Source of the DNA: Andalucia godoyi And28
Lineage: Eukaryota > Protista > Jakobida
DNA length: 64,000 bases
Assembly: GCA_009859145.1 (NCBI GenBank)
Contig: VRVR01000002.1
Coordinates: 96,635-160,634, forward strand
Direction: 5' to 3'
Shown here piece after piece: positions 41,001 through 59,489 of the stretch. Below the pieces are notes generated by a model. It was not told the origin of the DNA, did no database searches, and saw only the letters and a program-made list of their open reading frames with translations. A program made the position numbers and the translations under genes. Numbering within the stretch: the first letter of the stretch is position 1; every line of letters begins with the position of its first letter.

Positions 41001-44000
41001 CGAGAATCGCATTCTTCAACGGCACCACGACAATGTGCGTAGATACCGAGTTTTCTTCCGCTCTGCCCAAGAACTTGTTCGCAACTGAGGGATAGACTGC
41101 AGTCGCATTGACTTGGTACACAAATTCGCCGACTGCTTCGTCTGCAAAAGTAATTCTGCATACGTAGTCGCCAGACCGAAAACCAAGAAACTGAACAGGA
41201 ATTTTGATTCTCTCATCCGGCCTGAGCTGCAACTTGTCTGCTTTCAAGAAGAATGCATCCGGAAAATTGGCACGGTCCGCAATCGTAGAGGATGATGACG
41301 TGTTTTGAACAACGGATTTGTCACCAACCATGCGCCCTTTCGGAGGAGAAGCAGACTTCTTTGAAAGCACAGACGCGGAGGCGGACACGGATTGGCTTCC
41401 AGTGTACGACTGAGACAATAGAACAGTGAACCGGCCCGCTTGAAGAAACGGATTTTGCACTTCCACATCGAGAGTCTTCGGTTCGTAAACATTGGCTTCC
41501 AAAGCGAATGTCTTTGTGGCATGGGAGGTGTCCACAGCAGTTCGTAAAAGGAAGACCATGGAAGACGGCACGTGCTGCCCAACCTTACGTCCTAGAAGCG
41601 TAATTCTGCCTTCCACCGGCTTGCAGAACTTGCAAAGCGCGGTAACTGCCAGACTACAGGTTTTTTTTGGCTCCAAGCGAACCTTGTCTTCTGCTACCGA
41701 GAACGTGGGGGTCGCGTCCTTGGAATCAGTAGCAAAATGCTCGAGACGCACAGAAAACTCGATCAATCGCGAGGAAGGATTCGAAAGCTCGATATTCTTC
41801 ACGCAAGGCACCAAAAGTTGGCAAGGAAAATCTATTGAAGTCTTCGGGATAAAGCTTGGCAGATTTTGATAGAGATACCAACACAACAAGATCATGTCCC
41901 TCGCGTTTGGTGCCACAAGATCTCGGATGTCGGGAACATAGTCGAGACCGAGTTCTTTCATGCACGAAATCACAATTGCAGCATTATGTTCCAGATCCTC
42001 TTTAGACCGGCAGACCATCCGGAAAGCAGAGTACTTGCGAGAAAAGGTAGGAACGTGAGACTCCATCAATGAAAACAGCACATGACCGTCTCTCAAATCA
42101 GAGTCGAAGTTGATTATCTTTTTCCACGGCGCTGACGGCGCCGCATCCGCAGCACCCAGTTCTTTTGAAAGTGCATCTGTCGAGGACAACGGGAACGGTG
42201 TTCCTTTGTTTCGTGTGACATTGTAGTGGTATGTAAGCCATTTGAGAAGAATGTTCTCCGCAGAATTCATGAAGTTACTCTGCGTGATTGCGCCATCCGC
42301 AACAGACACGAACTCCTTTGCGATGCCCGGAAGCACTGCAAACGACTTCCATGTCACTCGATTCAACATGAAAACTTTGAAGATCTGATAAATCACATTC
42401 GTCCATGCTTCGGCAGCCCTCAGCATGAAGCGCTTTTCCGAAAACTTTCGCTGCTGCTGGGAGGGTAGTGGTACGCCAGACGCAAGAAGGGCCTCTTCAC
42501 GCAGCGACACAATGCGAAGGTAGTCTTCGTACCGCAACAAAAATTCAGGACGGACATCGTTCAAAAGCGCTCCGTGAGACTTCAAAAACGACAGAACCTC
42601 ATCATAGCGATTCATCAGCGATTGGACACCATCGCGCTGAGACACGGACTTTTCCGCTGCAGAAGCTTCTTTCTTCTTGGAGCTGTTGTCAGCCGTCTTC
42701 CCGGAAAGGAAGCCCACGAGATCGAACAACGGTTCCCCGTTGAACCGAATGAAGTCTGCGATCAAATCCTGAACAGGGTTCTTCAACACGCAGACGTTCA
42801 AGAAGCCTCGAATCCTCTCCAGGCTGCGACGGGAGTACAGCTGCTTTCGGAATCGCTCAGTCTTGCCATACACCGAAGATTCTGCTTCGGATTCAACACC
42901 CCCAGAATACACCGACAAACCGGAAGAGATTGACAGCTTCGCCAACGCTTCCATTTCGTCGGTTGTGCGCTCCAGCAACAACACAGGGCTTTCAAACGAA
43001 TCAGAGGCGACACGAACAGCCTCACGATGTCCATAAACATACGGGAAGATCGTGCACAAGGAGTTGTCCGTGGTTCCGCTGATCGGAATCGAAAACTTGT
43101 TCCCCTCATTGTCAAAGAAATCGATTTTCGCAGTGAAGGACGTTGGCTTCTTTGCACAAAACGAAACCTCAACAGGAATCTGCAATCGCGTGCGATCCAG
43201 AACAGACCCTTCGGGGAACTTGATGAACAGCGGGATTCTGGACGTGTCACCGGGAAGCTTGTGCTTCAAGTCAACAGTTTCATAGCCCTCATTAATGACG
43301 TGGAACACATAAGACGAGGTGAAACCGAGAGGAACAACAGGAAGGATGATCTCTCTCTGATCAAAAGTGATCATCGGATATATGCCAGTACCGCGCAACT
43401 CCAACTCGGCATACACCGAAGACGACCTGCTCGGCGATTCCGGGTCCAAAATAAGCGGAATCGTTGCAGCATATTGCTTATTTTCCCGCGGCTTGAAGAA
43501 AACTTTGATCGACACGGTGTCGCGAGGAAGAACGATCCCCTCCGTAACATCCAGCGTAAAGAAAGATGAACATGCCGCAAGGGCTTCCTCGCTGAACTTC
43601 CACTCGACAGGCTTATCCTCCTCGGAAGTAATCGTAAATTCGGATTCATGGCCAGAAACCAATTCCGAGCCGGGAATCTCTTTGAAAACAACACGATTCC
43701 GGAAGTCAACCATTGTAGTGGAGAGGCTGAGGCGGCTGGCCAAAGCTTGTGCCCGGACACGACGAGCAAGATTGGATCCTGCAGAAGCGACGCCTGCGAG
43801 AGTCAGCGGAAGATCAAATTCGTGGGTTCCGACTTCACTTGGAGAAAACACCATCCAGCAATGCAACTCTTCGTTCGGCTGAACAGTAATTCGATAGCGT
43901 CGCAAGTCAACATCGTCTTCAGAGGAGACCTCGGAAACGGCATCGTCCTCCTCCCCATCCTCTTTCTGGAAGCGAACTCCCCGTGAACTACTTTGCTCGG

Positions 44001-47000
44001 GGGTCGCCTTGCCTGCAGCGTCGTCACTGAGTAGGCCTTGGATGCCTTCTTCTCCAGGAATGGATCCCAGTCTTGCAATGCAAATTGGCGCATCCTCATG
44101 ATCCGGGACAGCGGTCCCATCCTCCAGTGTGCAGCTGAAATCTCGATGTTCTGTGAAATCCAAAAACAAAACAGCAGGAATGGCAGAAACATTCCGGAAA
44201 CTGGCCTTGCGACGCGCAACTCCATTGACGTAAATTTCCCCGAAGTTGAAAGAAGAACTGGGAATCGTGACGCTGGGAATCTGAGCATCTGCCTTGATGG
44301 GCAACCTGATTGACTTTCCTCCGCGGATAGAGAAGACCAACCGCGTGTCAACCACCTGCGGAACGCCGAGCTTAACAGACACTTGAATTTCTTGCGATGA
44401 GCGCATTCCGATTAACCCTCTAGGAGGAGTCACTGTAACTCCTGGCATCGTGGCATCGACAAAAAACACGGCATTGTTTTCTCCGACATTCCTAATCCGA
44501 AATGTCTTTGTTTTCAGCATACCCACAGGGACAATGCCAAATTCCAACTGCTTCTCCGCAATCTTGCACTTTGATTCGGCAACCAATCCATTGCAACGCA
44601 GAGATCGCACATGTCCGCCCTTCACGTCCAACAGCAATTCCGAAGCGGACTCGGAAACGTCCGGATCCGGGGAATAGGTGAACCGAGCAATTCCAGTCTC
44701 AAAAGGCTGAATAACCCCGGACACAGGCTCCACTGTAAACGCCCCATCCGTGGGAAGATTCTTCCAGCAAAACTGGGCCGGCGCACCAGAAGTATTCGTC
44801 AGCGACACCGTTTCGGTAACAGTTCTTTCCATCGAAAAGTCTCCGAATCGGAACAACACTTCTTCTGAAGACAGTCTGACATCGATGGGAACAATTTCCG
44901 CATACACCAGAAACTTCAGTCGATGGTGCCCATTGACCGTGAAATAAACCGTTTGTTGGAATGTCTGAGCAATGTCTGAACAAAGTGTGATATCAAAACC
45001 TGCGGTCCCATTGGGAGGGATAACTTGGCTCCACGGTGACGACTGCGAAAGCTCTTCCCGTTCGGATAATAGAGAAACCAAAACGGAGGTCGACAAGTGA
45101 TTCAGCACCGAAAAAGACTTGGTCAGTTTCGAATACACGGAAAGCGTACCAAAGTCCAAGACCTTTGGTCCATATGAAATTTGCATCAACTCCTTGGGGG
45201 AAAGCAAAGTGGCACATTCACGAGCTTCTGCAGGATTCGATGGATGTGGTTTGAACTTCTTTTTGATAATTTTGTTCTCATCAAACACCATTGATCGCTT
45301 TTTCGGACTTCCCTTCTGCGATGACTCTTGACCAGGCCGGTTGTTCAAAAAAAGAGGATCAGCTGCTGGTGGAAGTTCAAGACGAGGGGACTGCAGACCA
45401 TCTGCAGGAATCAGCCCAATGTCTCGATCGTTCATGTACATCACCTCGTGTTGGGATTGAGCCGCCAACACTTCATCCTCGTTCTTGCCTTGTCGGATGT
45501 AAGAGTTGTATTTCCTATGGTGGTCCATGGTCTTCACAAATTCCGGGTTACTGAGGGCGTCACTCTTCTTCACAACGTACGCACCAGTCTGTGAGGAAAC
45601 GTTTGCATCGGAGCTGCGCATCGAAATGGAAAAGGGATCCACAAACTTGAGTTCTGGTTTGAAATCTTCTGCAATTTTGTCCGTCCCTCCAATGATGGCC
45701 TTCTTGGGAGCAATTGTCGACGACGAACCGGAGACACGGATGGGAAAACGTACAATTCCACCGCAAACAGAGACCATGAGAATATGCTCAAAGCTGCCCA
45801 GTTGGCGGGGAGTAAAACTGAAAACAACATTCCTGGATTGCAGAGGCAGCAGCTTCCCTTTCGAAGGTCTGACAGAAAAGTTAGGAGCGGTTTCAATCGA
45901 GAAATCCACAGGAAGCTCGTCACTCTGGTTTTTCATGGTCACCAGATAGTCGCAATGGTCATTCGATGGACACTCTCCAAACACAAGTCGCTTTTCCGAG
46001 ACATCGATAGTCGGTGTGATCGCACGACCGACATAATTGAACGTCAACTTCTGCTCCGTCTCAATGACTTCTATTTGCATGCGTCCAAAATAGTCCTGCG
46101 TGCCAACAGCGTTGGTGGACGAGGTGCTCTTGAAGCCTCGTTTTGCAGTCGCAACTTCTGCTGAGAGAATAAACGTGATCTCGGCTTGCTGGTACGGCTC
46201 AAGGACCCCCTCTGGGGGATCTGCTTGAACGGGACCGAAACCGTCAGCATCCGAATTATCTTCTGAAGCATTGCCGCTGTCTCCTGTTTCTTCCTTGAAA
46301 GGCCGGATCACATAGGAGCACTTTGCTGGGGAATTGTTAACCAAAATCGCGGTCGTATGGTGTTTTTCTCCAAAAAACATCGTTCCGAACACCAGTTCCG
46401 AGACAACTCCTGCTGAATCCGGAGTCAGCAGTTCCACGCGGCTTTCAACACACGTTGCAAACACATCCAGAACACGGCTCTGCTGATTTTTCACATCTAC
46501 TTGAACGAATTGGCGAAATGGCCCAGGCTTTTCGCACGTGACACAGACTTTAAATTCCTGAGACATATGCGGGTCAATGATACCGTTTGCCGGGGCGATG
46601 CTCAGTTGACTGTCATCACAGGAAAATCGAAATTCGCCAGGAAGTGAACCGCAATTTTGGACTCGAAATGGCACCGTAAGCGGCTGTCCAACAACCACCG
46701 TGCCGACACTCAAGAACGGCTCAAACGCAAGATCAGCTGTTGGGAATGTCGCAGAAATGGGAACTTCAATCTTTTCGGTGTCAGACATGACGATGAGGCG
46801 ATCGAAGCTATCCTTCTTGTCTTTTGCGACGAATTCCAATTCCACAATTTGCTCCAATCCTGGTGCGATACCTTCTAGAGGAACGTATTGGAGTGAAAAC
46901 GCCTTTTGTGCAGGAGGGATGACACGAATTCGCTTCGTTTGCATGCTCGTATTTTGAATCGTAAGACGCATGAAATACTTGATTCCAGTTTGCACATCTT

Positions 47001-47139
47001 TGAACCTCACCTCTGGAGGAAACACACGAAAGGAAGGAGACACCAGCAATCCGGATGATGCCGGGGTCGTCAACTGCTGGGAAGAAGACGACGTGCCCTG
47101 CGAAACAGAGGCTGCTCGAGACCCGGAAACCATTTTCAT
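38071..47139 (-). CDS. CFAP47: Cilia- and flagella-associated protein 47 (about 3020 aa)
   Basis: Intronless 9-kb ORF of tandem ASH/MSP-like Ig-fold beta domains plus a calponin-homology domain (ILLKWLTYHY...INFDSDLRDGHVLFSL). Size and architecture match CFAP47. First ATG is at 47139. Confidence 0.85.
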   Translation of the reverse strand: MKMVSGSRAASVSQGTSSSSQQLTTPASSGLLVSPSFRVFPPEVRFKDVQTGIKYFMRLTIQNTSMQTKRIRVIPPAQKAFSLQYVPLEGIAPGLEQIVELEFVAKDKKDSFDRLIVMSDTEKIEVPISATFPTADLAFEPFLSVGTVVVGQPLTVPFRVQNCGSLPGEFRFSCDDSQLSIAPANGIIDPHMSQEFKVCVTCEKPGPFRQFVQVDVKNQQSRVLDVFATCVESRVELLTPDSAGVVSELVFGTMFFGEKHHTTAILVNNSPAKCSYVIRPFKEETGDSGNASEDNSDADGFGPVQADPPEGVLEPYQQAEITFILSAEVATAKRGFKSTSSTNAVGTQDYFGRMQIEVIETEQKLTFNYVGRAITPTIDVSEKRLVFGECPSNDHCDYLVTMKNQSDELPVDFSIETAPNFSVRPSKGKLLPLQSRNVVFSFTPRQLGSFEHILMVSVCGGIVRFPIRVSGSSSTIAPKKAIIGGTDKIAEDFKPELKFVDPFSISMRSSDANVSSQTGAYVVKKSDALSNPEFVKTMDHHRKYNSYIRQGKNEDEVLAAQSQHEVMYMNDRDIGLIPADGLQSPRLELPPAADPLFLNNRPGQESSQKGSPKKRSMVFDENKIIKKKFKPHPSNPAEARECATLLSPKELMQISYGPKVLDFGTLSVYSKLTKSFSVLNHLSTSVLVSLLSEREELSQSSPWSQVIPPNGTAGFDITLCSDIAQTFQQTVYFTVNGHHRLKFLVYAEIVPIDVRLSSEEVLFRFGDFSMERTVTETVSLTNTSGAPAQFCWKNLPTDGAFTVEPVSGVIQPFETGIARFTYSPDPDVSESASELLLDVKGGHVRSLRCNGLVAESKCKIAEKQLEFGIVPVGMLKTKTFRIRNVGENNAVFFVDATMPGVTVTPPRGLIGMRSSQEIQVSVKLGVPQVVDTRLVFSIRGGKSIRLPIKADAQIPSVTIPSSSFNFGEIYVNGVARRKASFRNVSAIPAVLFLDFTEHRDFSCTLEDGTAVPDHEDAPICIARLGSIPGEEGIQGLLSDDAAGKATPEQSSSRGVRFQKEDGEEDDAVSEVSSEDDVDLRRYRITVQPNEELHCWMVFSPSEVGTHEFDLPLTLAGVASAGSNLARRVRAQALASRLSLSTTMVDFRNRVVFKEIPGSELVSGHESEFTITSEEDKPVEWKFSEEALAACSSFFTLDVTEGIVLPRDTVSIKVFFKPRENKQYAATIPLILDPESPSRSSSVYAELELRGTGIYPMITFDQREIILPVVPLGFTSSYVFHVINEGYETVDLKHKLPGDTSRIPLFIKFPEGSVLDRTRLQIPVEVSFCAKKPTSFTAKIDFFDNEGNKFSIPISGTTDNSLCTIFPYVYGHREAVRVASDSFESPVLLLERTTDEMEALAKLSISSGLSVYSGGVESEAESSVYGKTERFRKQLYSRRSLERIRGFLNVCVLKNPVQDLIADFIRFNGEPLFDLVGFLSGKTADNSSKKKEASAAEKSVSQRDGVQSLMNRYDEVLSFLKSHGALLNDVRPEFLLRYEDYLRIVSLREEALLASGVPLPSQQQRKFSEKRFMLRAAEAWTNVIYQIFKVFMLNRVTWKSFAVLPGIAKEFVSVADGAITQSNFMNSAENILLKWLTYHYNVTRNKGTPFPLSSTDALSKELGAADAAPSAPWKKIINFDSDLRDGHVLFSLMESHVPTFSRKYSAFRMVCRSKEDLEHNAAIVISCMKELGLDYVPDIRDLVAPNARDMILLCWYLYQNLPSFIPKTSIDFPCQLLVPCVKNIELSNPSSRLIEFSVRLEHFATDSKDATPTFSVAEDKVRLEPKKTCSLAVTALCKFCKPVEGRITLLGRKVGQHVPSSMVFLLRTAVDTSHATKTFALEANVYEPKTLDVEVQNPFLQAGRFTVLLSQSYTGSQSVSASASVLSKKSASPPKGRMVGDKSVVQNTSSSSTIADRANFPDAFFLKADKLQLRPDERIKIPVQFLGFRSGDYVCRITFADEAVGEFVYQVNATAVYPSVANKFLGRAEENSVSTHIVVVPLKNAILDKACENIVQRMKELKLRRKAPEVLPTDEPIKYKVEYLSPYLSGPKEIVLNKKTSGEVDASLGKAKSAAKSDGDEVLPLEFRPKEAGVYSCRFLLRSAYDVRLYEFEGKALSAGHKASLEFAVPCRQSITQDIPLVNRTTNQDWVIQADLRGQYFTAPREIKVPRNSTVNFSLTFSPSWICDVRGELILLNPTTDDKMIFQLRGQAEEPLAADHVVIDCKARQVVEYQLTVTELPGNKNTANSIFDVEFDLPFFKGERLFKPSQSGSVYSFVIAPPRSGSYTGSIVFKAPSSEEFSWYTVEVNAERASAEGSVRLQTPIRQAVVAEVSITNPFDVPVEFDVRMDGAGLMGEPKVVLDAGESAAYPLVYCPLFSGQSKGSISFANNEFGEFWYDLILVAEAAEDVVLPEFRCEIGVRKSAKVRIENPIGEEITLRATSSNPQNFRGHPDTFLIGPYDSFDVEVEYCPSSIMSAETGIVQFSNPVAGTWTYKCSGVGLLPTTMEEIMVASPVGRTTTQVASFRNPFPDTRWFSVAVGTVLAEEDPSRPSTTSSAHSSLSSSLYHNMRSASAASSVPGPSSIIPDDRVYQLLLRPLRQAVKGFSTLQIPFSFTPTRMTEFNAHLLVEMIAPPPSSADYAANFDEHVPGTNQRLQWKYPIRGVAENTPSDRPFRFKCKARTRMEENVEIVLPDLLPHSMIQGMPTSGIGAQSTANSIPIHEEFTHELKIPAETSTLLNRALSIVATDDQIVTRVNQPLKYHVTFVPLRSFRATVQLVIHKKSGGRWKFDVELEATPPDPDDIIIIESNMHKTENVCFRLTNIFPTPAHFEARFTPESPLEFTVIPTSGTLAPFGSEDGTPFIVSYTATNYGKTLSGMLEILSDDMQWRYEVRGCLPEYLPPQEVKTRLDTRLSTTVENQIAQRSMQKRNFLLENLKSDANRRTGAPAGPQPTEEPVLREGSTVSRRSNRSAGTRVSRSLLP

Positions 47140-47508
47140 ACTCTGAAAAAGACAAAAAATAGAATCTACAAGCCTGCAAACAAAACTTTGAAGATCTGTC
47201 GAAGGGCAGTCCTGGGAGAAAAAGCAGAAAGGCGAGGGACGAAATATATGCGGTGAACAGCAAAAACAAGGTCTTAATAGAATGAATGGGAAAAAGCGCA
47301 CTCATGAATCGGAAAACGAACAGAATGTCGTTGCGAGGGAATCATGTTTCAGATTTCCTCAAAGGGAAAAAACAAAAAGGACGGGATGACATGACACCAC
47401 AAACCGTTATCAAGTTGGCTTGATGCTTCCCAATTTTCTCCAATCAGAAACTTCAGAATCCAATAGTTCAAACACCCCCCGTTGAATGTCCTCGCATTGA
47501 TTTATTAT

Positions 47509-50754: not shown

Positions 50755-50787
<33 letters not shown>
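50755..50787. repeat. (TG)n microsatellite
   Basis: About 16 units, read directly. Confidence 0.95.
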
Positions 50788-50788
<1 letters not shown>

Positions 50789-51330
50789 AGTGCGTGACAT
50801 CGCCTGCATCGTACACTAATCATCTGTCCCATCGCCGCAGGGGGCCGTCACGTATCTCGGGATCCCCATGGGGAAAAGGATAGAACAATGCGGCACGTAC
50901 AAAATTAAAAACACGGAAGATTTTTTTAATATTTTTTGTTGTTGTTGTTTTGGCAAAACATGATCATCCGAAAATGGACACGGATGCAATGACGATGCTC
51001 CTTTAGTCCCATTGGCAAACAGGGTACCATTGTTCATTCTTGTCGTGCGAGGACTGGGCCGAGGAAACAAGCAGACGACAGTCGGCAATGAGCAAGGTGA
51101 TACGAGGTTTTACTGTACTACGGGCATACGCATGCATATGCCATCCACGCGCAATGCAGGACGCAAAAGACGGCAAAAAACCTGCATCCAACAACACAAC
51201 TCGGCACAGCAAACACATCACCAATCCGCAACAAAAAATCAAAATCAAAACCAAAACCAAAATCAACACCAAAATCAAAATCAAAGAGGTGAAACGAAAG
51301 CTGATAAATAACATTCTGCTCCCGCGAAGT

Positions 51331-52089: not shown

Positions 52090-52573
52090 GCTTTGCTCTC
52101 CTTTTCTTGAAATATGAAGATATATATATGTGTGTGTGTATGCAGAACAAATCCGGTGAACTGTTCGAGCTGGGAATCGGCAATGACAATGCTTTGTCAG
52201 CAAATGATGCTCGGATGACCTAATGCTCGGTTGCCCTGGGTGGCTGGGTGATTGGGGTCCTGGACGTGTCAGAAACGGAATGCCGCTTTATTTCCAAAGG
52301 TCTCCCAAGTTTCAACTTCCGAAGTTTCCCTGCGCTTTGGAAAGCCTTCAGAACGTCATACCCTCAAATGGAGCAGAAAATAGAACTTGGTTTGCATCAC
52401 TTGAGTCATAATAACTACGACGGATTGCGGACTGCACAATCACCGCTTCTCTCCCCGCCAAGTCTGCTGCGTAATTGAATGTTTGTTCTGTTTCGTTTCT
52501 TTTCTTAATGCATGCAGACGCTTATAAACTGTACTACCGGTGCATTTATTTTTACAATGCATGCAATCACTGA

Positions 52574-55500
52574 ACAGTACGCACGAGCTGTATCGCCATC
52601 ATCGGGGATTGCACGATCTGTGAAGGTCCAGCTTCGGACATCCATGAGGCAGTCGATCGGTGCAGCTTTGAGGAGTCTGTTGAAAAAGCGGCAGACGTCC
52701 TGGCCAGCTGCCCGGCAGTGGTGACTGCAGAAGCTGTTCTGACCTACTCAGAGCTTCGTTCTCGAGCACGCGCAATTGCAGCTGCGCTTTTAGGCCGGGG
52801 GCTGAAAAAGGAGGAGTGCGTTGGCGTTCTCGTCCAGCGCTCCGTAGCTCTGTCGTCGGCTTTTCTGGGCGTTCTTATGGCCGGCGGAGTGTACGTTCCT
52901 CTCCTGCCAAGTCTTCCAGCAAGTCGTCTCTCATACATTGCAATGCACTGCAACATGCGTTTCATTGTCGCTCTAGACGGATTGATTCCCCTCGAAGATG
53001 TGATGTCGCAAGTCAAGAGCAACTGGGCGAAAACCGCGCATGCGGAGGTCACTGGAACCGTCGAAGAAGCACGGATTCTGTTGCGGCCGGAAGACCTTAC
53101 GTCTGACCATACCGCGGACTCGGTGCGAGGCCCATCTGGAACAACGTCGGATGTCGCGTGCATCATGTTCACCTCTGGATCTACGGGTGTGCCCAAAGGC
53201 GCAGTGCTGGAACATAAGGGGTTGATTCATTGCGCTCTAGGACACATATAGTTGCACAACGTGACGCTTGCAGACAGGATGAGCATGGGAGCCCCGCCGT
53301 GCTTCTTGACCAGTCTTCGTGAGCTTGTCCTGCCGCTTCTGTCTGGAGCATCCTCCTTCCCTCTCAGCAGAACAACAATCGACAATCCGACAGAAGTCGT
53401 CCGTATGATGGACAGGCACAAGGTCACAATAGCGTGCTTTACACCGTCGTATGTCAGTCTGTTTGCTGGTGCGTGTCCCCCCAGCCTCCGCTGTCTCCTC
53501 ATCCAAGGAGAACGGCCACACACCAAGGTCGCGAAACGCTACGCCGGTCTTCTCAATCTCTACAACTCATACAGAGCTACGGAGAACACCGACTCCATGT
53601 GCATTGCAAAAGTCCAAGACATCACGGAACATGCGGTTACGATTCCGGCAGGCCGACCGTTTCCTCACGTTGGCGTGCATATTCTGAAAGAAGATGGAAG
53701 CGATGCCGGTCCCGGGGAAACAGGGATCATCCACGTTACTTGAAGAGGACTGGCCCGCGGCTATCTGAATGATCCAGAGAGGACGGCAGAATCGTTCGTA
53801 ACAACAGCACACGGCAGAGCTTTTCGGACAAACGAATTCGGTCGCTGGAATGAAGATGGAGAACTGGAAGTGCTTGGACGGGCAGACGACGTCTTCAAGG
53901 TGTCTGGGCAGGCAGTCTCTCCTGCAGAGATTGAGATGAGCGCACTGCTTTTCCCCGATGTGAAGCGTGCACGTGCCATACACTTCGCAAATCGGGGTAT
54001 CCTGCTGGTTGTCGAAAGCGAGTCCAAGGCGGTCAATAGCATGAGCCTGGCCGACTGGCGCGAGTTTTTCAACAACAAACTGCCAAAACATGCATCCCCA
54101 TCTCGCGTTTTGGTTATGCCGATGCTTCCTCGTACAGCAAATGGGAAAGTGGACAAGCTGCAACTCGAAGAGCATCTTCGTGCGGAACAGAGAAGGTCCC
54201 AGAGCTTTATTCTCCAGAATTACAAGGATACAGTAGAGATCCACACACTCATTGTTCTGCAAGAAGTCCTGGACTTTGAAATCCTGGCAGACGCAGGAAG
54301 TTTCTTCTCACTGGGAGGAACCAGCCTTCATGCAATCGCGGTGTGCCAACACCTTTACGATTTGGGGTATTCAATCGAACCTCGTGTTGTGCTTTCTCTG
54401 CCGTCCGTGGCAGCACTTGTTACTCAACTTCGCAAGCGAAGACACAGGGAATCGTCCATTTATGCTGCAAAGGGTTGGAAAACAGTGTTGCAGAATCGGG
54501 TATTGCGACGATCGGACAGCAGGACTGTTACGTTGCGTCACTACTCGATCCGTCCACCGTGTCTGGTGCACGTGTCGTTCGCATTTTGGAAGTTGACGGC
54601 ACTCGTCGCCCCCTGTCTGATTTTCAGTAAGCGTGATCTAGACTGTTATTTCGACATGACGCTCTCAGAACATTCTTCCGAGAGAATAACCAGCAGAAGA
54701 CACTGGAATGGGTGACAATGGTCAGTCAAAATCGACAGAGATGCTCTGCTGCGCCTGCCTGTGAATGTCGACCAGAGAGAATCTGGTATGCGCGGAGGAA
54801 AGACTCTCCCGGAGTCGAGTTTGGAGGTTACCGTGTCGGAGGCATGGAAAAGTGTATGCGGCACGGAGAAAGTTTTTCTGGAAGACAACTTTTTCGCGCA
54901 CGGTGGAAACAGTTTGCTGGCAGTATTGCTGACTCGAAAGCTGACAGAGTGTCTCGGCGTCTCAGTTCCTGTGCGAACAGTGTTCGGGGCTCCGGTGCTT
55001 GCGGATTTCGTACAACAAATTGCATCCCTTCTCAAAAAGTCGAAATCCGACGGGTCACGCAGCGACGTAAGCGCAGCTGCATCCGATTTCTTAACTGAAG
55101 GAGAAATGGAATACTGGAATTTGGAACAAGAAGGACGAGATGCATGCAGTCACAACATTCCGGTATTCGTGTACGTGGACCTGCCCGACGGTATGCCGTT
55201 TCCCGGCGTGGACGCGTGGAACCGGGCGCTTGAAGAAGTCGCGAAGAGACACGAGACTCTTAGAACATCATATTACCAGGATGCAGACGGGAACTTACGT
55301 CGGAGCGTATCCCATGAAATTCATCCGTGCTGCACTGTCACAGATATCCCGGACACCGATTCTGCAAGTGCTCGGTTCCAGGAACTTCATAATCAAGACA
55401 TTCCGCTCGGCAGAGCGCCGTTATGGCATGCCGGATGCATGCACATATCCGACAGTGACAAGTTTGTTTTCTGGATGAGCATGCACCACATCATTGGTGA

Positions 55501-56488
55501 TGGCAAGTCTGCCGGAATGTTTCTTCGAGATCTGATGCAGGCTCTGAGCGGATGCAGTCCGGCGATCCCGAGAGGAACAACGACTTACCAGACAACGGCA
55601 GACAGAGATATGAGCTATCTCAAGAGCGAAAGAGCGGGTGCGGACAAAGAATTCTGGACGACAGCGCTTGCTGAAGTCGTTCCTGCAGCTTTCGGTGAGT
55701 GGCCCGTTGACACTTCACGCGATCTTGCGCAGAATCCTCTCAGTTCTGGCTGCCATCGGCTTTATGCCATTTTCGACATGAAGGCCACGGAAGCAATGCA
55801 GTCCCCGGCTCGGCAACTGAGCGTCAGCCTGCACACTCTCTGGGCTAGCATTCTTGCTCTCGAAGTCTTTTGTCGAAGCGGCAAAACGCAGCTCCTGATG
55901 GGTACTCCTGTGGACATTCGCGAGGACGGCGAAGCTGAAAACATGGGATACTGTGTGAATGAACTGCCGCTGGTCTTTAATGTCCACAGCCGGGTGACGT
56001 TCGGTGATCTTGTTGACAGCACACAGCGGAAGCTTGAAAATGCGTTGATGCATTCTAAGTACCCTTTCCGACTCATTGCTGAGGAGAAAAAGCTGGAGAT
56101 GCAGGGTGACTGCCAAGCCCAAGGCAGAATGAGGCATGACCTCTTCGACATTTCGGTGACTGAAATCCCGTCCGCGCAGAATGTGGAATCCAAAGGAATA
56201 CACTTTCGTCGAAGGACACTCGAAGAGATCCAGGGTTCTGCAAACTGGTGCAAAACCTCCACATGGATGTGCGCATACGAGAGAACCTCGTGGCCCCACG
56301 CGGAAGACATCGTTCTCATGCACGAAATCGGGAAGTTGGGCGAAATGCATGTTCAGTGGCACATGAACGACCCCTTGTACTCGAGGACGACCGCGGAATC
56401 CTGGTTCCAGTCCATCTTACCCAGTGTGCTGTGGCTGACAGAAAACACGGAAACTGTCCGCAGCAAGCTCATTTCAGAAATCTTGTAA
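52574..56488 (+). pseudogene. Disrupted multimodular non-ribosomal peptide synthetase (A1-T1-C2 fragment // A2 end-T2-C3)
   Basis: One frame carries LTYSEL, LMAGGVYVPL, FTSGSTGVPKG, [TAG 53249-51], YNSYRATE, [TGA 53741-43]RGLARGYL, LGRADD, NGKVDK and T1 FFSLGGTSL. After a frameshift near 54470 comes a C-domain start, IGQQDCYVASLLDP...FQ[TAA]A[TGA]SRLLFRHDALRT. At about 54725 the sequence jumps to KIDRDAL, then T2 FFAHGGNSL and C3 with RHETLRT and HHIIGDG. Confidence 0.88.
54788..56488 (+). CDS. Possibly still-coding stand-alone thiolation-condensation (T-C) didomain, 566 aa
   Basis: Uninterrupted frame from the ATG at 54788. The phosphopantetheine Ser (GGNS) and catalytic HHxxxDG are intact, and the C domain is complete. 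Confidence 0.4.
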   Translation: MRGGKTLPESSLEVTVSEAWKSVCGTEKVFLEDNFFAHGGNSLLAVLLTRKLTECLGVSVPVRTVFGAPVLADFVQQIASLLKKSKSDGSRSDVSAAASDFLTEGEMEYWNLEQEGRDACSHNIPVFVYVDLPDGMPFPGVDAWNRALEEVAKRHETLRTSYYQDADGNLRRSVSHEIHPCCTVTDIPDTDSASARFQELHNQDIPLGRAPLWHAGCMHISDSDKFVFWMSMHHIIGDGKSAGMFLRDLMQALSGCSPAIPRGTTTYQTTADRDMSYLKSERAGADKEFWTTALAEVVPAAFGEWPVDTSRDLAQNPLSSGCHRLYAIFDMKATEAMQSPARQLSVSLHTLWASILALEVFCRSGKTQLLMGTPVDIREDGEAENMGYCVNELPLVFNVHSRVTFGDLVDSTQRKLENALMHSKYPFRLIAEEKKLEMQGDCQAQGRMRHDLFDISVTEIPSAQNVESKGIHFRRRTLEEIQGSANWCKTSTWMCAYERTSWPHAEDIVLMHEIGKLGEMHVQWHMNDPLYSRTTAESWFQSILPSVLWLTENTETVRSKLISEIL

Positions 56489-57125
56489 ACAAGGAACGCA
56501 CCTATGGCGGAGCGCAATGCAAACGTCGCGAAGCAAAGGGATAAGTTTACCGCATACGCAGTAGTGTTTGCCTTGCCGAGCTTTTGCAGGTACCATTGCG
56601 TCTGCCCGAAAGGTACTGCGATTTCCGAGGCGAATCCCCAGAGCAGGTTGAAGCCACAGAATCGGTAAACTGTACCCCAAAGAGACAACATAGTATGGAG
56701 CTTACGTGATGGATGACGAACGACGGGGTGAAATCCGATCGGAAAACGTACGTGGATGTCTCAAACACGGTGTATCCAAACACAATACCAGAAAACTCGG
56801 TCAAACTGCGGAGTGTGTCCAAAGAAGTAGTCGTCCCACACTGCAGACTCGGTCGCGAGCAGGTACAGTACACAGCCGCTGACGAGGATGGATTCGAGGT
56901 ACGGCGTGAATTTGCAGACGAATCGAACACGCTCCTTTTCATCCAGCTGCCTTGGTGCTTGGCAAAGACTTTGGAGAAGACCATGGAGACCAGTCCTGCC
57001 ATCGCAAAGCTCAGCACTATCGTGCAGGCCGCATAGACGACAAAGCTGGTGAACCAATACCAGCACTCGGTCAGGACTTGCCATGAAGACTTTCCAACAA
57101 TGCACTCAGATGGTATCACATCCAT
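56353..57125 (-). pseudogene. TLC (TRAM/LAG1/CLN8; TLCD4/TMEM56-like) domain gene with three frameshifts and a 3' truncation
   Basis: TLC-like segments alternate between two frames: MDVIP...FSKVFAK / RQLDEKERVRFVCKF...WDDYFFGHTP / FGYTVFET...FVIHHVSSI / LSLWG...FASEIAVPF...WYLQKLG...FATFALR. Shifts lie near 56955, 56780 and 56692. Confidence 0.7.
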
Positions 57126-57319
57126 TGTCGCTCCGTCGTGATTTGCTTATCAGCACTTCTCCAAGCACGCCTTACACGGTTTGCAATACTCGATACTCTT
57201 CCCACTCTGCCTTTCCGCCCTTGTATCCTCGCGGCCTTATCACACACGCGCTTGGATTACAGCTGCGTTCGCCTCTGTGATGAACTACGCGATGGATTCT
57301 GAATTGTGGAGGTGTTTTA

Positions 57320-58059
57320 TTACTCCTTCTTTTCGCGCTTCATCTGGATATCGTAGTTGTACAATCTTGCCATGGAGACTTCCATTGTGGTGATGCAGTC
57401 TTTGAGGAATGCCAAGTCCTCGTCGACTTCCTTGAGAGCCTCCTCCATGCGATGGCTGTTCTTCTGCAGCATCTCGAGTGCCTCGTCATGCGAAAATTCC
57501 ACAGCAGTATTCGCTCCCAGCCACACAACGACGGTGTCGGCCTTGTGCAGCTCGGCCTCCGTGTGAATCTGCGCAGAAACATTGAACTGCGTGCGGACCG
57601 CTTCGTTCTTTCCATGTTTTTCCTTGAGAAAACGGATCATTTCGACGGTCTTTTCAACATCAGGAAGCTTCTTCTTGTACTGAGCCTTGGACTGCAGCTT
57701 CTGCGACTCCATCATCCGGTACTTTGAGAACAGATCTTCCACAGAACGGAACGCAGCTTCAAACGAGCCGGCCTTTCGCACAAACGCCTCAACATCCTCC
57801 TATACATCCACATCCATTTCCCAACAAAACCAATGTGTACATACATATACATGATAGAAAATCATTAGAAAATAAATATTAAAAAAACAAAAAAAAACCC
57901 ACCAAATGCACCAAGTTGAACAAATGATTGTATATGAAGATCATGAAAGAGCAAACATACAATGAACTCGGCGCGAGGAATCCCTCTTCCGTTCTTGTAG
58001 TCCGCAGGAAACCCTTCGAGATAAAGAGCAGAAATCGCACTGGATATTTCCGTCGACAT
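57320..58059 (-). CDS. VBP1: Prefoldin subunit 3, 2 exons
   Basis: Exon 1 58059-57961 (...NGRGIPRAEFI), intron GTATGT...TAG, exon 2 57799-57320 (EDVEAF...VVWLGANTAVEFSHDEA...ITTMEVSMARLYNYD); 192 aa. Confidence 0.92.
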
Positions 58060-58661
58060 TTTCCTCCCAGTATGAAACACTCTCCCCCCCAAAAAAAAAC
58101 ACTGAACACCCCTCTCTACCTCAACAGAAAAAGGACAAGAGAGTTGATGAACGAAATCAAGGCGCACAACAATAACAAGACATACCCAAAAAAAACAACC
58201 TGAAAGAAAATATTAAAACTCCAAAGGCACAGCAAACAAAAGCAAAGGAACAGACATTGGGCGGGCCTGTAAAGGCACGAGATTTGCAAGGGAAAATGTG
58301 TGGTCTCAAGCCTCAATTTGGATTGGATTAGGCGGGAACCTTTTGGGGCGGGGCAAGTTCGTGTCTCCTGACTTGGAGTTCACTGTCTGCCAGACTTCAC
58401 CACGCTTTTTTCCCTTCCTTTCTTTCCTCTTCTGCTGTCGAAAGAAATGCGTTGCGAATAGAGGAGTTACTTGTTGCACACACAACTCGTAGAGTACATG
58501 CGGGTAAGAATGTTTTGCTGTTAATCTTTGGCGTTGTTTGAATCTCATTTTTCTCTTGTGTTATACATTTTGCTTTTTTACTTTTATTTTTAATTTCAAT
58601 TTTAATTTTTGTTTTTGTGTTGGTTTGTTTTTCATTTGCATAAAGCGCCGTATAGGAAAGA

Positions 58662-59489
58662 ATGACGAACCATCTTCCTCCTGGACATGCTGGTCCACCG
58701 GATGCCACAAGGAACGAGCCGCCTCCATCTGCTGCACACTCCGAGCACTCCGAGCACTCCGAGCACACGGCCTCTAGACCTTCCGCACGGCCATCTGCCG
58801 CCTCCGCAACAGCACCAAGCTCTGGGCATCAGGAGAGTCACCGGTTTGCCGAGTACTTTCGAGAACTTTCGACGCGCTGGAAAAAGCATGCAGATGAACT
58901 GGTGGAACAGTCTGCAGCGACCCGTCGGTCGCTCAAGAAGCTTCGGCGGTCGGTGGTTGTTGCAACTGTGATTCCTCTGGTGGGTGGCGTACTTGTGTAT
59001 ATGAACTGGCCGTATTTGCGACACCGGTTTGCGCTGGAAACGAGATCTATTACCCAGCAGACGATCCAGGATGAGGATGTGCAGGACAACTTGCGGCAGA
59101 CTGTCATCAAGGTACTCAGAGACCCAAAGGTCAAGGAAGCTGCAGGAGAGCTGATGAAGGAAAAGGCACTCGTCATCATCAAAAGCAGCGATTTTCAAAC
59201 CAAGTCGCAGGAAGTGCTCAAAAAGGTCGTCCTGCGAGTGCTCAATGATCCTGAAGTCCTCGGAAAAATCAGAGAACGGTCCGTCGATGCTGTGCAGTCT
59301 GTGGAGACAAAACGAGCAATTGAAAAGGTGTTGCTGGACCCGGATTTGCATGCGGACGCTGGGATCTTTTTGCAAAACACGCTCAAGAATGCAATTTGGA
59401 GACCTGCAGCAAAGAAGCAGACCGATGAAGCAGTACAAGTGTCCGTGGTGGGCGGCAACCCCTCTTCTTCAGTTCCAAACAACACCTGA
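58662..59489 (+). CDS. Orphan single-pass membrane protein with helical L-x-D-P-x-V repeats
   Basis: 275 aa. TM helix VVVATVIPLVGGVLVYMNW, repeated VLRDPKV / VLNDPEV / VLLDPDL, and an N-terminal 9-bp repeat encoding HSEHSEHSEH. Confidence 0.7.
   Translation: MTNHLPPGHAGPPDATRNEPPPSAAHSEHSEHSEHTASRPSARPSAASATAPSSGHQESHRFAEYFRELSTRWKKHADELVEQSAATRRSLKKLRRSVVVATVIPLVGGVLVYMNWPYLRHRFALETRSITQQTIQDEDVQDNLRQTVIKVLRDPKVKEAAGELMKEKALVIIKSSDFQTKSQEVLKKVVLRVLNDPEVLGKIRERSVDAVQSVETKRAIEKVLLDPDLHADAGIFLQNTLKNAIWRPAAKKQTDEAVQVSVVGGNPSSSVPNNT

What the first reader, a model, noticed from the sequence alone, without database searches (positions are those of the whole stretch)
52574..56488. Fossil multimodular NRPS in a protist nuclear genome
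Seen: the A-domain core motifs, two carrier domains (GGTS, GGNS) and two condensation domains are recognisable and intronless. They are interrupted by TAG 53249, TGA 53741 (at a conserved Gly), a frameshift near 54470, TAA 54628, TGA 54634 (likely Trp) and a junction near 54725 that deletes most of C2 and nearly all of A2. Neighbouring genes, including a 9-kb ORF, are clean, so general assembly error is unlikely. Knowledge: true multimodular C-A-T synthetases are typical of bacteria and fungi and are rarely described in heterotrophic flagellates. Inference: this lineage had, and may retain elsewhere, an undescribed peptide natural-product pathway, either acquired horizontally or from an expanding and decaying gene family.
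Basis: partly seen in the sequence, partly recalled or inferred. Interest (0 to 1): 0.8.

Follow-up and report, generated by a model that had tools for sequence, protein, structure and literature searches.

The report
Decayed bacterial peptide-synthetase gene in protist
The nuclear genome of the jakobid flagellate Andalucia godoyi holds the broken remnant of a bacterial-type nonribosomal peptide synthetase gene, so this protist once took up, and probably used for a while, a bacterial natural-product gene that can no longer make a peptide.

Summary
Window 52,574-56,488 (+), in the Andalucia godoyi nuclear genome, carries a broken NRPS. It reads A1 (two in-frame stops, no in-frame ATG before the core), T1, a frameshift, then the first ~75 codons of a C domain (two more stops). 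A junction at 54,700-54,722 removes ~877 codons (the rest of that C and nearly all of A2). An intact 575-codon T2-C ORF follows.

The locus is colinear with the first 2,111 residues of a bacterial NRPS family, (A-T-C)3-4-A-T-reductase with a TauD neighbour. That family occurs in Azospirillum, Terasakiella, Methylobacter, and Burkholderiales and Acidobacteria MAGs (35-45% identity). Trees place A1 and T2-C inside the family at the matching positions, on a very long branch. Modules 3 onward, the reductase and the cluster partners are absent.

Codon usage and dinucleotide signature are host-like, unlike 66-73 bacterial NRPS genes. The four stops imply only ~3% neutral decay. So the gene was probably kept open in the protist for a long time and died recently. 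I found no paralogue and no eukaryotic orthologue.

Verdict: a real, bacteria-derived NRPS pseudogene, a new example of a known kind, of moderate interest.

The parts
52574..53248 (+). A1, N-terminal part (motifs A1-A3: LTYSEL 52739-56, FTSGSTGVPKG 53168-200). Homology to bacterial module-1 A domains starts at about 52625-52667. There is no in-frame ATG before 52877.
   Evidence: Pfam AMP-binding E 2e-38; TIGR01733 is the best NCBIfam model; 42% identity to P0061 residues 18-593 across all of A1-T1; coordinates.
53249..53251 (+). In-frame TAG inside A1, between motifs A3 and A4.
   Evidence: the alignment continues across it without a gap.
53252..53740 (+). A1, middle part (A4 CFLTSLRE 53300-23; A5 NSYRATE 53564-84; start of A6).
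   Evidence: Pfam AMP-binding E 1e-17; alignment to TycA and to the bacterial family. Gly to Arg in A5 is specific to the window.
53741..53743 (+). In-frame TGA in motif A6, at a column that is Gly or Ser in the bacterial family.
53744..54157 (+). A1, C-terminal part (A6b RGLARGYL; A7 FRTNEFGRW 53822-48 with the family-invariant Asp replaced by Glu; A8 53876-935; A10 NGKVDK 54140-57).
54236..54448 (+). T1 carrier domain, serine in FFSLGGTSLHAI (54302-54337).
   Evidence: Pfam PP-binding E 2e-5. GGTS is a family trait.
54431..54489 (+). Frameshift zone in the T1-C linker (frame 2 to frame 1).
   Evidence: In tblastn, frame-2 homology ends at 54430-54457 and frame-1 homology starts at 54475-54490.
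54490..54717 (+). Remnant (about 75 codons) of the first condensation domain: C1 motif ATIGQQDCYV 54505-34 and C2 motif RHDALRTFF 54652-78. It is interrupted by TAA 54628-30 and TGA 54634-36.
   Evidence: 36-40% identity to P0061 611-679 and P0071 599-677; alignment; sequence.
54700..54722 (+). Deletion junction. About 877 codons (about 2.6 kb) of the homologues are missing here: the rest of the C domain and A2 up to its A10 motif.
   Evidence: The homologue coordinate jumps from 679 to 1557.
54725..54748 (+). Last motif (A10-like, VKIDRDAL) of the deleted A2 domain.
54761..56488 (+). Intact ORF T2-C3: 575 codons from GTG, or 566 from the first ATG at 54788. The annotated model P0001 starts at 55106 and covers the C domain only. 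T2 serine lies in FFAHGGNSLLAV 54890-925; the C3 active site is MHHIIGDGKS 55481-510. The TAA stop at 56486-88 falls at the C/A linker of the homologues.
   Evidence: Pfam PP-binding 6.5e-11 and Condensation 8.4e-37; 35% identity to P0061 1557-2111; tree; P0001.

Best explanation
This is a unitary pseudogene derived from a bacterial NRPS gene that entered the nuclear genome of the Andalucia godoyi lineage by lateral transfer.

Its source is a bacterial family of four- or five-module synthetases, (A-T-C)3-4-A-T-R. These begin with an unusual A domain that lacks the alpha-amino-binding Asp. They end in a thioester reductase and sit next to a TauD-type dioxygenase, ABC transporters and a PPTase. 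The protist copy corresponds only to A1-T1-C-A2-T2-C, the first two modules plus the next C domain.

Shown: the homology, the colinearity, the lesions and the host-like composition.

Inferred:
- The copy was kept as an open, selected reading frame in the protist for a long period, long enough to take on host codon usage and dinucleotide signature and to diverge strongly.
- It lost function only recently. It then picked up four stop codons, one frameshift and a 2.6-kb internal deletion, and may have lost its start and its 3' modules.
- Today it cannot adenylate or load anything: A1 is broken and A2 is gone. No peptide is made from this locus.
- The surviving T2-C ORF is most likely an accident of where the lesions fell.
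For: Host genome: the flanking prefoldin gene is 99% identical to ANDGO_03073. Eukaryotic genes lie within 59 bp and about 370 bp of the locus.

Bacterial origin:
- The exhaustive search finds nothing closer than 30-35% identity apart from the locus itself. The full-length matches that are named or have readable context are bacterial.
- Their contigs carry TauD, ABC transporters, a PPTase and two-component regulators.
- In the scan of bacterial and archaeal genomes (185,579 species), the family turned up in Azospirillum, Nitrospirillum, Roseomonas, Terasakiella, Magnetospirillum, Methylobacter, Burkholderiales, Bryobacterales and Chlorobiaceae, at 37-44% identity.

Colinearity: P0061 residues 18-593, 611-679 and 1557-2111 map in order onto 52667-54430, 54490-54699 and 54722-56470.

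Shared family-specific motifs: no Asp235, HGATE-type A5, KVSGQ in A8, GGTS carrier.

Trees:
- T2-C sits inside a clade of 37 family units with SH-aLRT 100.
- The three A1 pieces sit inside a clade with SH-aLRT 100 that otherwise holds only module-1 A domains.

Long residence but recent death:
- The terminal branch is 2.02 changes per site against a median of 0.24.
- The RSCU correlation with host genes is 0.66. It is at most 0.52 (median 0.33) for 73 bacterial NRPS genes and 0.74-0.83 for host chunks of the same size.
- GC3 is 0.51-0.60 against 0.55 in the host.
- The dinucleotide distance to the host is 60, inside the host range (median 47, 95th percentile 71). It is at least 75 (median 157) for 66 bacterial NRPS segments.
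- Four stops in about 1,296 codons correspond to only about 3% neutral divergence.

Family architecture with a terminal reductase.
Against: - The copy lacks modules 3 onward and any release domain. There is no in-frame ATG ahead of A1, and no cluster partner lies in the window. A fragment that never worked would look the same in these respects.
- The donor is unsampled. A bacterium, or another eukaryote, whose composition happens to match the host cannot be excluded.
- The RSCU correlation (0.66) is still below that of host gene chunks of equal length (0.74-0.83).
- The window retains only 77-78% of family-invariant positions, against 87-100% in bacteria. This could mean a longer neutral phase than the stop count suggests, or a changed function.
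- No orthologue in another jakobid is known. The one related contig recovered (L001) shares only the prefoldin gene and the stretch just upstream of it.
- Expression and read support could not be examined.
Confidence: 0.6

Rival explanations
1. Dead on arrival. A fragment of a bacterial NRPS gene, or the first gene of a split NRPS, was inserted into the nuclear genome. It was never expressed as a working enzyme and has simply been decaying since.
For: - It corresponds to only the 5' half of every known family member, with no release domain.
- There is no in-frame ATG ahead of A1.
- No TauD, transporter or PPTase remnant lies nearby.
- Only the C-domain ORF (P0001) is a predicted protein in the database searched. 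The A1c-T1 piece found no such model, and the other A1 pieces were not searched.
- Family members with about 50% GC exist (Terasakiella, a Pseudomonadota MAG).
Against: - Neutral decay judged from stops is only about 3%, so the composition would have to be the donor's own. Yet none of 73 bacterial NRPS genes matches host codon usage as well, and none of 66 matches the host dinucleotide signature as well. The family members with the same GC3 score only r = 0.19-0.21.
- Both ends are 'clean': homology begins near the gene start, and the stop codon falls at a domain linker. That is unlikely for a random fragment.
Confidence: 0.25
2. Partial survival. The synthetase is dead, but the intact T2-C ORF (566 codons from ATG 54788, annotated in part as P0001) is still expressed and is kept by selection as a free-standing carrier-condensation protein with some new role.
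For: - All five point lesions lie in the 5' 55% of the locus. P = 0.056 for the four stops weighted by stop-prone codons, and about 0.03 with the frameshift counted by length.
- HHxxxDG, the carrier GGNS serine and the other C motifs are intact.
- A gene model exists for it.
Against: - It has lost as many family-invariant positions (9 of 41, 22%) as the broken A1-T1 part (25 of 110, 23%), so it shows no extra constraint.
- No A domain is left to load its carrier, and no other NRPS was found.
- The lesion-distribution test is post hoc and marginal.
- No exact-match gene is on record in the public assemblies for either P0001 (460 aa) or the 566-aa product.
Confidence: 0.1
3. Artefact. The segment is bacterial contamination or a chimeric join in the assembly, or the stops and frameshift are sequencing errors in a gene that is really intact.
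For: A. godoyi cultures contain food bacteria (general knowledge). I could not inspect reads.
Against: - Eukaryotic genes flank the segment closely on both sides of one contig.
- Composition and codon usage are host-like, not bacterial.
- No bacterial sequence in 15 billion proteins exceeds 35-45% identity.
- The lesions include substitutions to stops and a 2.6-kb deletion with no repeat to collapse on.
- Neighbouring ORFs of up to 9.2 kb are error-free.
- The genome paper reports excellent agreement between genome and RNA-seq.
Confidence: 0.03
4. Ancient eukaryotic or vertically inherited NRPS, or a member of a jakobid NRPS gene family, rather than a transfer from bacteria.
For: A very long terminal branch. 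Host-like composition.
Against: - It nests inside bacterial clades at both ends with SH-aLRT 100.
- It shares derived motifs of one bacterial family.
- No identifiably eukaryotic relative and no paralogue appeared in any search.
- There are no introns.
Confidence: 0.02

Closest known systems
Bacterial (A-T-C)3-4-A-T-R NRPS family with an adjacent TauD dioxygenase. Examples: Terasakiella pusilla WP_417793250.1 (P0071), an uncultured Burkholderiales MAG (P0061 / L007), and Azospirillum, Nitrospirillum, Roseomonas and Methylobacter loci L008-L032. I know of no characterised product.
   Same: - Domain order is the same over the first 2,111 residues.
- Module-1 A domain traits are shared: no Asp235, HGATE in A5, KVSGQ in A8, and a GGTS carrier.
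- Identity is 35-45%.
- The trees group A1 with A1, and T2-C with the family's T2-C3-type units.

   Different: - It sits in a eukaryotic nucleus with host-like composition.
- It lacks modules 3-4(5), the reductase and all cluster neighbours.
- It is interrupted by four stops, a frameshift and a 2.6-kb deletion.
- Its terminal branch is about 8 times the family median.
- It has lost 22-23% of family-invariant residues.

Horizontally acquired NRPS/PKS genes of bdelloid rotifers (PMC11258130) and the bacteria-to-fungus transfer of a hybrid NPS/PKS (PMC3226686).
   Same: A bacterial-type multimodular synthetase gene resident in a eukaryotic nuclear genome through interkingdom transfer.
   Different: Going only by the titles and abstracts seen, those genes are presented as working genes (the rotifer genes are said to be deployed against a fungal pathogen). 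This copy is truncated and disabled, and sits in a heterotrophic flagellate.
Fungal A-T-C-A-T-C dipeptide synthetases with a terminal condensation-like release domain (from my own knowledge; not tested here).
   Same: Before the internal deletion, the protist copy had the same domain order and also ended in a C domain.
   Different: By homology the last C domain here is an internal elongation domain of a longer bacterial enzyme. None of the best 150 proteins whose origin could be read (names for ten, context for two) was fungal.
Housekeeping adenylate-forming enzymes (Lys2 / alpha-aminoadipate reductase, Ebony, acyl-CoA ligases).
   Same: All share the ANL-superfamily A domain and a carrier domain.
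   Different: This locus has condensation domains. TIGR01733 (amino acid adenylation domain) is the best NCBIfam model for the first two A pieces. The Lys2 model TIGR03443 reaches only 26-47 bits against a cut-off of 1030. Solved NRPS A domains outrank CoA ligases.

Membership tests
Modular nonribosomal peptide synthetase | Adenylation domain with the NRPS-type core motifs | tested here: met
   Pfam AMP-binding on two pieces (132.5 + 64.2 bits) and a weak AMP-binding_C. TIGR01733 is the best NCBIfam model for the first two pieces (111.7 and 70.3 bits). For the third piece it scores 66.0 bits, below several whole-NRPS models. The best solved structures are LgrA, TycA and GrsA. Motifs A1-A10 are located.
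Modular nonribosomal peptide synthetase | Carrier domain with the phosphopantetheine-attachment serine | tested here: met
   PP-binding is found twice. The serines lie in GGTS (within 54302-54337) and GGNS (within 54890-54925).
Modular nonribosomal peptide synthetase | Condensation domain with HHxxxDG | tested here: met
   The last C domain scores Pfam 8.4e-37 and has MHHIIGDGKS at 55481-55510. The first C domain keeps only its first about 75 codons and has lost the motif to the deletion.
Modular nonribosomal peptide synthetase | One uninterrupted reading frame per synthetase, giving a working assembly line | tested here: not met
   Four in-frame stops, one frameshift, a deletion of about 877 codons, and no start codon ahead of A1.
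Modular nonribosomal peptide synthetase | A chain-release function (TE, R or terminal C) and a partner Sfp-type PPTase | tested here: inconclusive
   There is no TE or R domain in the locus, and no PPTase in the 64-kb window. The rest of the genome could not be searched.
Bacterial (A-T-C)n-A-T-R family (Azospirillum / Terasakiella type) | Module-1 A domain signature (no Asp235, HGATE, KVSGQ) and positional orthology of domains | tested here: met
   Alignment. A1 pieces fall in an SH-aLRT 100 clade of module-1 A domains. T2-C falls in an SH-aLRT 100 clade of family units.
Bacterial (A-T-C)n-A-T-R family (Azospirillum / Terasakiella type) | Four or five modules ending in a thioester reductase | tested here: not met
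   Homology ends at homologue residue 2111 and window position 56470, with the stop at 56486. No further NRPS homology exists anywhere in the window. The reductase is present in the homologues.
Bacterial (A-T-C)n-A-T-R family (Azospirillum / Terasakiella type) | Cluster context: TauD downstream, with ABC transporters and a PPTase nearby | tested here: not met
   These are present in L002-L005. A tblastn of 1,039 ORFs from 11 family loci against the window hit nothing outside the NRPS itself.
Unitary pseudogene of laterally transferred origin | Disabling lesions relative to functional homologues, foreign phylogenetic affinity, and physical linkage to host genes | tested here: met
   Lesions. 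Bacterial affinity. Host flanks.
Unitary pseudogene of laterally transferred origin | No functional transcript or protein | not testable with these tools
   No RNA-seq or read data were available. Only the C-domain ORF appears as a predicted protein (P0001).
Lys2 / alpha-aminoadipate reductase, Ebony and other housekeeping A-T enzymes | A-T-R or A-T-only architecture without condensation domains, matching the equivalog models | tested here: not met
   C domains are present. TIGR03443 scores 47 and 26 bits against a cut-off of 1030.

The most novel reading that the evidence does not exclude
The jakobid lineage domesticated a truncated bacterial synthetase (A-T-C-A-T-C) and used it for a long time. 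After the adenylating part collapsed, the surviving 566-codon carrier-condensation ORF (54788-56485) is still expressed and selected as a free-standing acyl- or peptidyl-transfer enzyme working in trans. That would be an exapted NRPS fragment in a protist.
Probability: 0.1. Interest if true: 0.6.

Novelty: new member of a known kind. Interest (0 to 1): 0.4.

Why it matters
Jakobids are studied mainly for their bacteria-like mitochondria. Their nuclear genomes are barely explored for foreign genes, and I found no paper that links jakobids to NRPSs.

This locus is a clear, datable case of a large bacterial natural-product gene entering a bacterivorous flagellate's nucleus. It apparently stayed open long enough to take on the host's composition, and then decayed.

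It adds a data point to two debates: how often eukaryotes acquire secondary-metabolism genes, and how long they keep them. It also points to an uncharacterised, widespread bacterial NRPS family (Azospirillum, Terasakiella and others) as the source.

It does not reveal a living pathway or a new mechanism.

Tried and rejected
- Introns as an explanation for the stops. Rejected: alignments to Pfam and to bacterial homologues run through each stop without a gap.
- Motif 'decay' in A1 (no Asp235, YGPTE replaced, unusual A8, GGTS). Mostly rejected as evidence of decay, because the bacterial family shares these traits. Only Gly to Arg in A5 and Asp to Glu in A7 are specific to the window.
- Synteny with a relative. 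The only related contig (L001, Logan run SRR15116022, prefoldin 59% identical) shares prefoldin and the stretch just upstream, then diverges. It says nothing about the NRPS.
- Exact-product look-ups for P0001, the prefoldin model and the 566-aa ORF in public assemblies: nothing on record. P0061 was too long for the look-up.
- Other cluster remnants in the window: none. The only hits were antisense-frame echoes inside the NRPS.
- Repeats or microhomology at the deletion junction, or a mobile element at the ends: nothing convincing.
- ATGCATGCA upstream of the gene as a possible host promoter motif. It occurs only four times in the window, all in this locus, so it is not a general host signal.
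- GC content alone as evidence of amelioration. Rejected, because family members with about 50% GC exist. I replaced it with codon-usage and dinucleotide comparisons.
- Extra constraint on the intact T2-C ORF. Not found: it has lost invariant positions at the same rate as the broken part.
- Identifying the donor. The window branches beside Methylobacter units with SH-aLRT 91 on a very long branch, and at the base of all module-1 A domains. I treat the donor as unresolved.

Full report
**Where the window comes from**

The ORF at 57320-57781 (-) is 99% identical to EukProt ANDGO_03073, 'Prefoldin subunit 3'. The window is therefore nuclear DNA of the jakobid flagellate Andalucia godoyi. The other flanking ORFs have eukaryotic families: Arf, NIF phosphatase, and weaker sperm-microtubule and cytochrome b558-like matches.

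The genome paper describes a compact genome of about 20 Mb. About 12% of the genes it examined have GT..AG introns of 55-756 bp (PMC7050145).

**Checking the observation**

Pfam finds AMP-binding on 52574-53248 (profile 4-193) and on 53252-53740 (profile 204-374). It finds AMP-binding_C plus PP-binding on 53744-54712, and PP-binding plus Condensation on 54761-56485. The three-frame translation and the raw sequence confirm each lesion:
- TAG at 53249-51 and TGA at 53741-43, both in the A-domain frame.
- TAA at 54628-30 and TGA at 54634-36, both in the remnant of the first C domain.
- A change of frame between 54431 and 54489.

Alignments to Pfam, to solved NRPS structures and to bacterial homologues pass through each stop without a gap. 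None of them is an intron.

Homology then jumps from homologue residue 679 to residue 1557 between 54700 and 54722. This deletes about 877 codons. Only the A10-like motif VKIDRDAL (54725-48) survives from A2.

I add three things:
- There is no in-frame ATG between the upstream stop and 52877, which is already past motif A1.
- The ORF ends at a C/A linker although all homologues continue.
- Two family-invariant catalytic-motif residues in A1 have changed.

**What it is related to**

I searched the pieces separately and never as a read-through protein.

A word-index search with the intact T2-C ORF found only the locus's own gene model (P0001, 460 aa, C domain only) and bacterial fragments at 22-27% identity over most of the query.

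The exhaustive HMMER search again found no close relative. It did reveal a tier of proteins that match the whole 575 residues at 30-34% identity: P0061, P0062, P0063, P0064, P0068, P0071, P0074, P0093 and P0104. Ordinary NRPSs match at 23-28% and only to about residue 445.

The named ones are bacterial: Terasakiella pusilla and a Rhizomicrobium MAG. The contigs of P0064 and P0211 are bacterial operons. In them the NRPS is followed by TauD, with ABC transporters, Band_7, DUF697, two-component regulators and a PPTase nearby.

I then scanned one genome per bacterial and archaeal species with an alignment of the A1 C-terminus and T1. The family appeared at 37-44% identity in:
- many Azospirillum species;
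- Nitrospirillum, Niveispirillum, Roseomonas, Terasakiella and Magnetospirillum;
- Methylobacter;
- a Burkholderiales MAG (the contig of P0061);
- Bryobacterales/Solibacteraceae and a Chlorobiaceae MAG.

Below that there is a drop to generic NRPSs at 26-34%.

**Colinearity and what is missing**

- P0061 residues 18-593 align to 52667-54430 (42% identity).
- Residues 611-679 align to 54490-54699, in the shifted frame.
- Residues 1557-2111 align to 54722-56470 (35% identity).

P0064 and P0071 behave the same way. Motif mapping and Pfam show that family members are (A-T-C)3-4-A-T-R, 4,164-5,274 residues long, with a terminal NAD_binding_4 reductase.

The protist copy is therefore A1-T1-C'-[deletion]-A2'-T2-C and nothing more. 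Modules 3 onward and the reductase are absent. No other NRPS homology exists anywhere in the 64 kb. None of 1,039 ORFs from 11 family loci (TauD, transporters, PPTase and so on) has a match outside the NRPS itself.

**Family traits versus decay**

Several oddities of A1 that look like decay are shared by the bacterial family:
- no Asp at the position that binds the substrate's alpha-amino group (window code by alignment to TycA: L, T, R, S, L, Q, S, D, S);
- A5 without Gly-Pro;
- KVSGQ in A8;
- a GGTS carrier.

Specific to the window are Gly to Arg in A5, Asp to Glu in A7, and 23 other changes at family-invariant columns. The window keeps 85 of 110 invariant columns (77%) in A1-T1-C'. Bacterial members keep 87-100% when each is left out in turn.

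The intact T2-C ORF keeps 32 of 41 (78%), against 91-100% for bacteria. The two halves are equally eroded.

**Phylogeny**

- T2-C falls inside an SH-aLRT 100 clade of 37 units. All are family T-C units, mostly at position 2. The window's terminal branch is 2.02 changes per site, against a median of 0.24.
- The three A1 pieces fall inside an SH-aLRT 100 clade that otherwise holds only the 18 module-1 A domains. They branch at its base.

Both ends are thus positional orthologues of one bacterial gene family. The exact donor is unresolved, because the branch is long.

**History (inference)**

Counting the single-base neighbours of each codon that are stops, four stops in about 1,296 codons correspond to about 3% neutral divergence. 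That is far too little to explain either the long branch or any change of composition.

Yet the locus looks like host DNA:
- GC3 is 0.51-0.60, against 0.55 +/- 0.04 in host genes.
- The RSCU correlation with host genes is 0.66. The maximum among 73 bacterial NRPS genes is 0.52 (median 0.33). Family members with the same GC3 score 0.19-0.21. Host chunks of equal size score 0.74-0.83.
- The dinucleotide distance to the rest of the window is 60. Host chunks have a median of 47 and a 95th percentile of 71. The 66 bacterial NRPS segments score at least 75, with a median of 157.

A neutral fragment that had drifted far enough to ameliorate would carry dozens of stops. The simplest reading is that the gene sat in the protist genome for a long time as an open, selected frame and was inactivated recently.

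The clean ends fit a once-working truncated gene better than a random fragment. Homology begins near the gene start, and runs right up to a stop codon placed at a domain linker. The alternative is a dead-on-arrival fragment from an unsampled donor whose composition happens to match. I cannot exclude that, and I give it 0.25.

**The intact T2-C ORF**

All five point lesions lie in the 5' 55% of the locus. P = 0.056 for the stops weighted by stop-prone codons, and about 0.03 with the frameshift counted by length. The active-site and carrier motifs are intact, and a gene model exists (P0001).

Against continued function:
- It is no better conserved than the broken half.
- Nothing is left to load its carrier.
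- No other NRPS turned up.

I rate continued function at about 0.1.

**Artefact and other rivals**

Contamination or a chimera is unlikely:
- Host genes lie 59 bp and about 370 bp away on the same contig.
- The composition is host-like.
- No bacterial sequence exceeds 45% identity.
- Neighbouring ORFs of up to 9.2 kb are clean.

Only reads can settle this. A vertical or eukaryotic-family origin is contradicted by the nesting inside bacterial clades and by the absence of any recognisable eukaryotic relative among the matches that could be identified.

**Comparison with what is known**

Searches of the paper library found nothing that links jakobids or A. godoyi to NRPSs. Transfers of bacterial NRPS/PKS genes into eukaryotes are known, for example into bdelloid rotifers (PMC11258130) and filamentous ascomycetes (PMC3226686).

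This locus is a new, dead example of that known kind, in a lineage where none had been reported. Its source family is widespread in bacteria and, as far as I know, has no characterised product.

**Limits**

- No reads, transcripts or the rest of the genome were available.
- The trees are quick searches with SH-aLRT support only, and they involve one very long branch.
- The codon and dinucleotide comparisons use host genes from this window only.
- The lesion-distribution test is post hoc.

Noticed in passing
window 52508-52516, 52557-52565, 55140-55148, 55435-55443: The 9-mer ATGCATGCA occurs four times in the 64-kb window (0.7 expected; none of 100 shuffles reached 4). All four copies lie in or just upstream of the NRPS locus. 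Two of them sit in a 21-nt imperfect direct repeat 49 nt apart, immediately upstream of A1.
   Followed up: partly
window 57320-57781 (-): The prefoldin ORF is 153 codons, but the matching annotated protein ANDGO_03073 is 192 aa at 99% identity. The gene model probably has an intron or an upstream extension beyond this ORF.
   Followed up: no
L001 (Logan SRR15116022, 6,124 bp) against window 57284-58212: A contig from an unidentified relative carries a prefoldin gene 59% identical to the window's, and shares the stretch just upstream. Downstream it has Evr1_Alr and radial-spoke-3 genes instead of the window's 56547-57125 ORF and the NRPS, so synteny breaks exactly at the side where the NRPS sits.
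   Followed up: partly
window 50755-50787, 51235-51285, 58575-58616, 58737-58766: Intergenic microsatellites occur around the locus: (TG)16.5, (AAAATC)8.5, (TTTTAA)~6, and a perfect 9-mer repeated 3.3 times (CACTCCGAG) inside the overlapping ORFs at 58632-59489.
   Followed up: no
window 38071-47301 (-) and 39667-41088 (+): A 3,076-codon ORF with no stops carries a 473-codon ORF on its opposite strand. The antisense ORF is probably spurious. Similarly, 58632-59438 (-) and 58662-59489 (+) overlap almost completely, and only one of them can be real.
   Followed up: no
L002-L005, L006-L032 (bacterial loci): The bacterial source family, (A-T-C)3-4-A-T-reductase, starts with an A domain that lacks the alpha-amino-binding Asp and has TauD directly downstream. 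It is widespread in Azospirillaceae and scattered in Methylobacter, Burkholderiales, Acidobacteriota and Chlorobiaceae. As far as I know it has no characterised product.
   Followed up: partly
window 56547-57125 (-): A 192-codon ORF with no Pfam match ends only 59 bp from the NRPS stop codon, in convergent orientation. Its origin (host or co-transferred) was not established. It has no match among the ORFs of the 11 bacterial family loci examined.
   Followed up: partly
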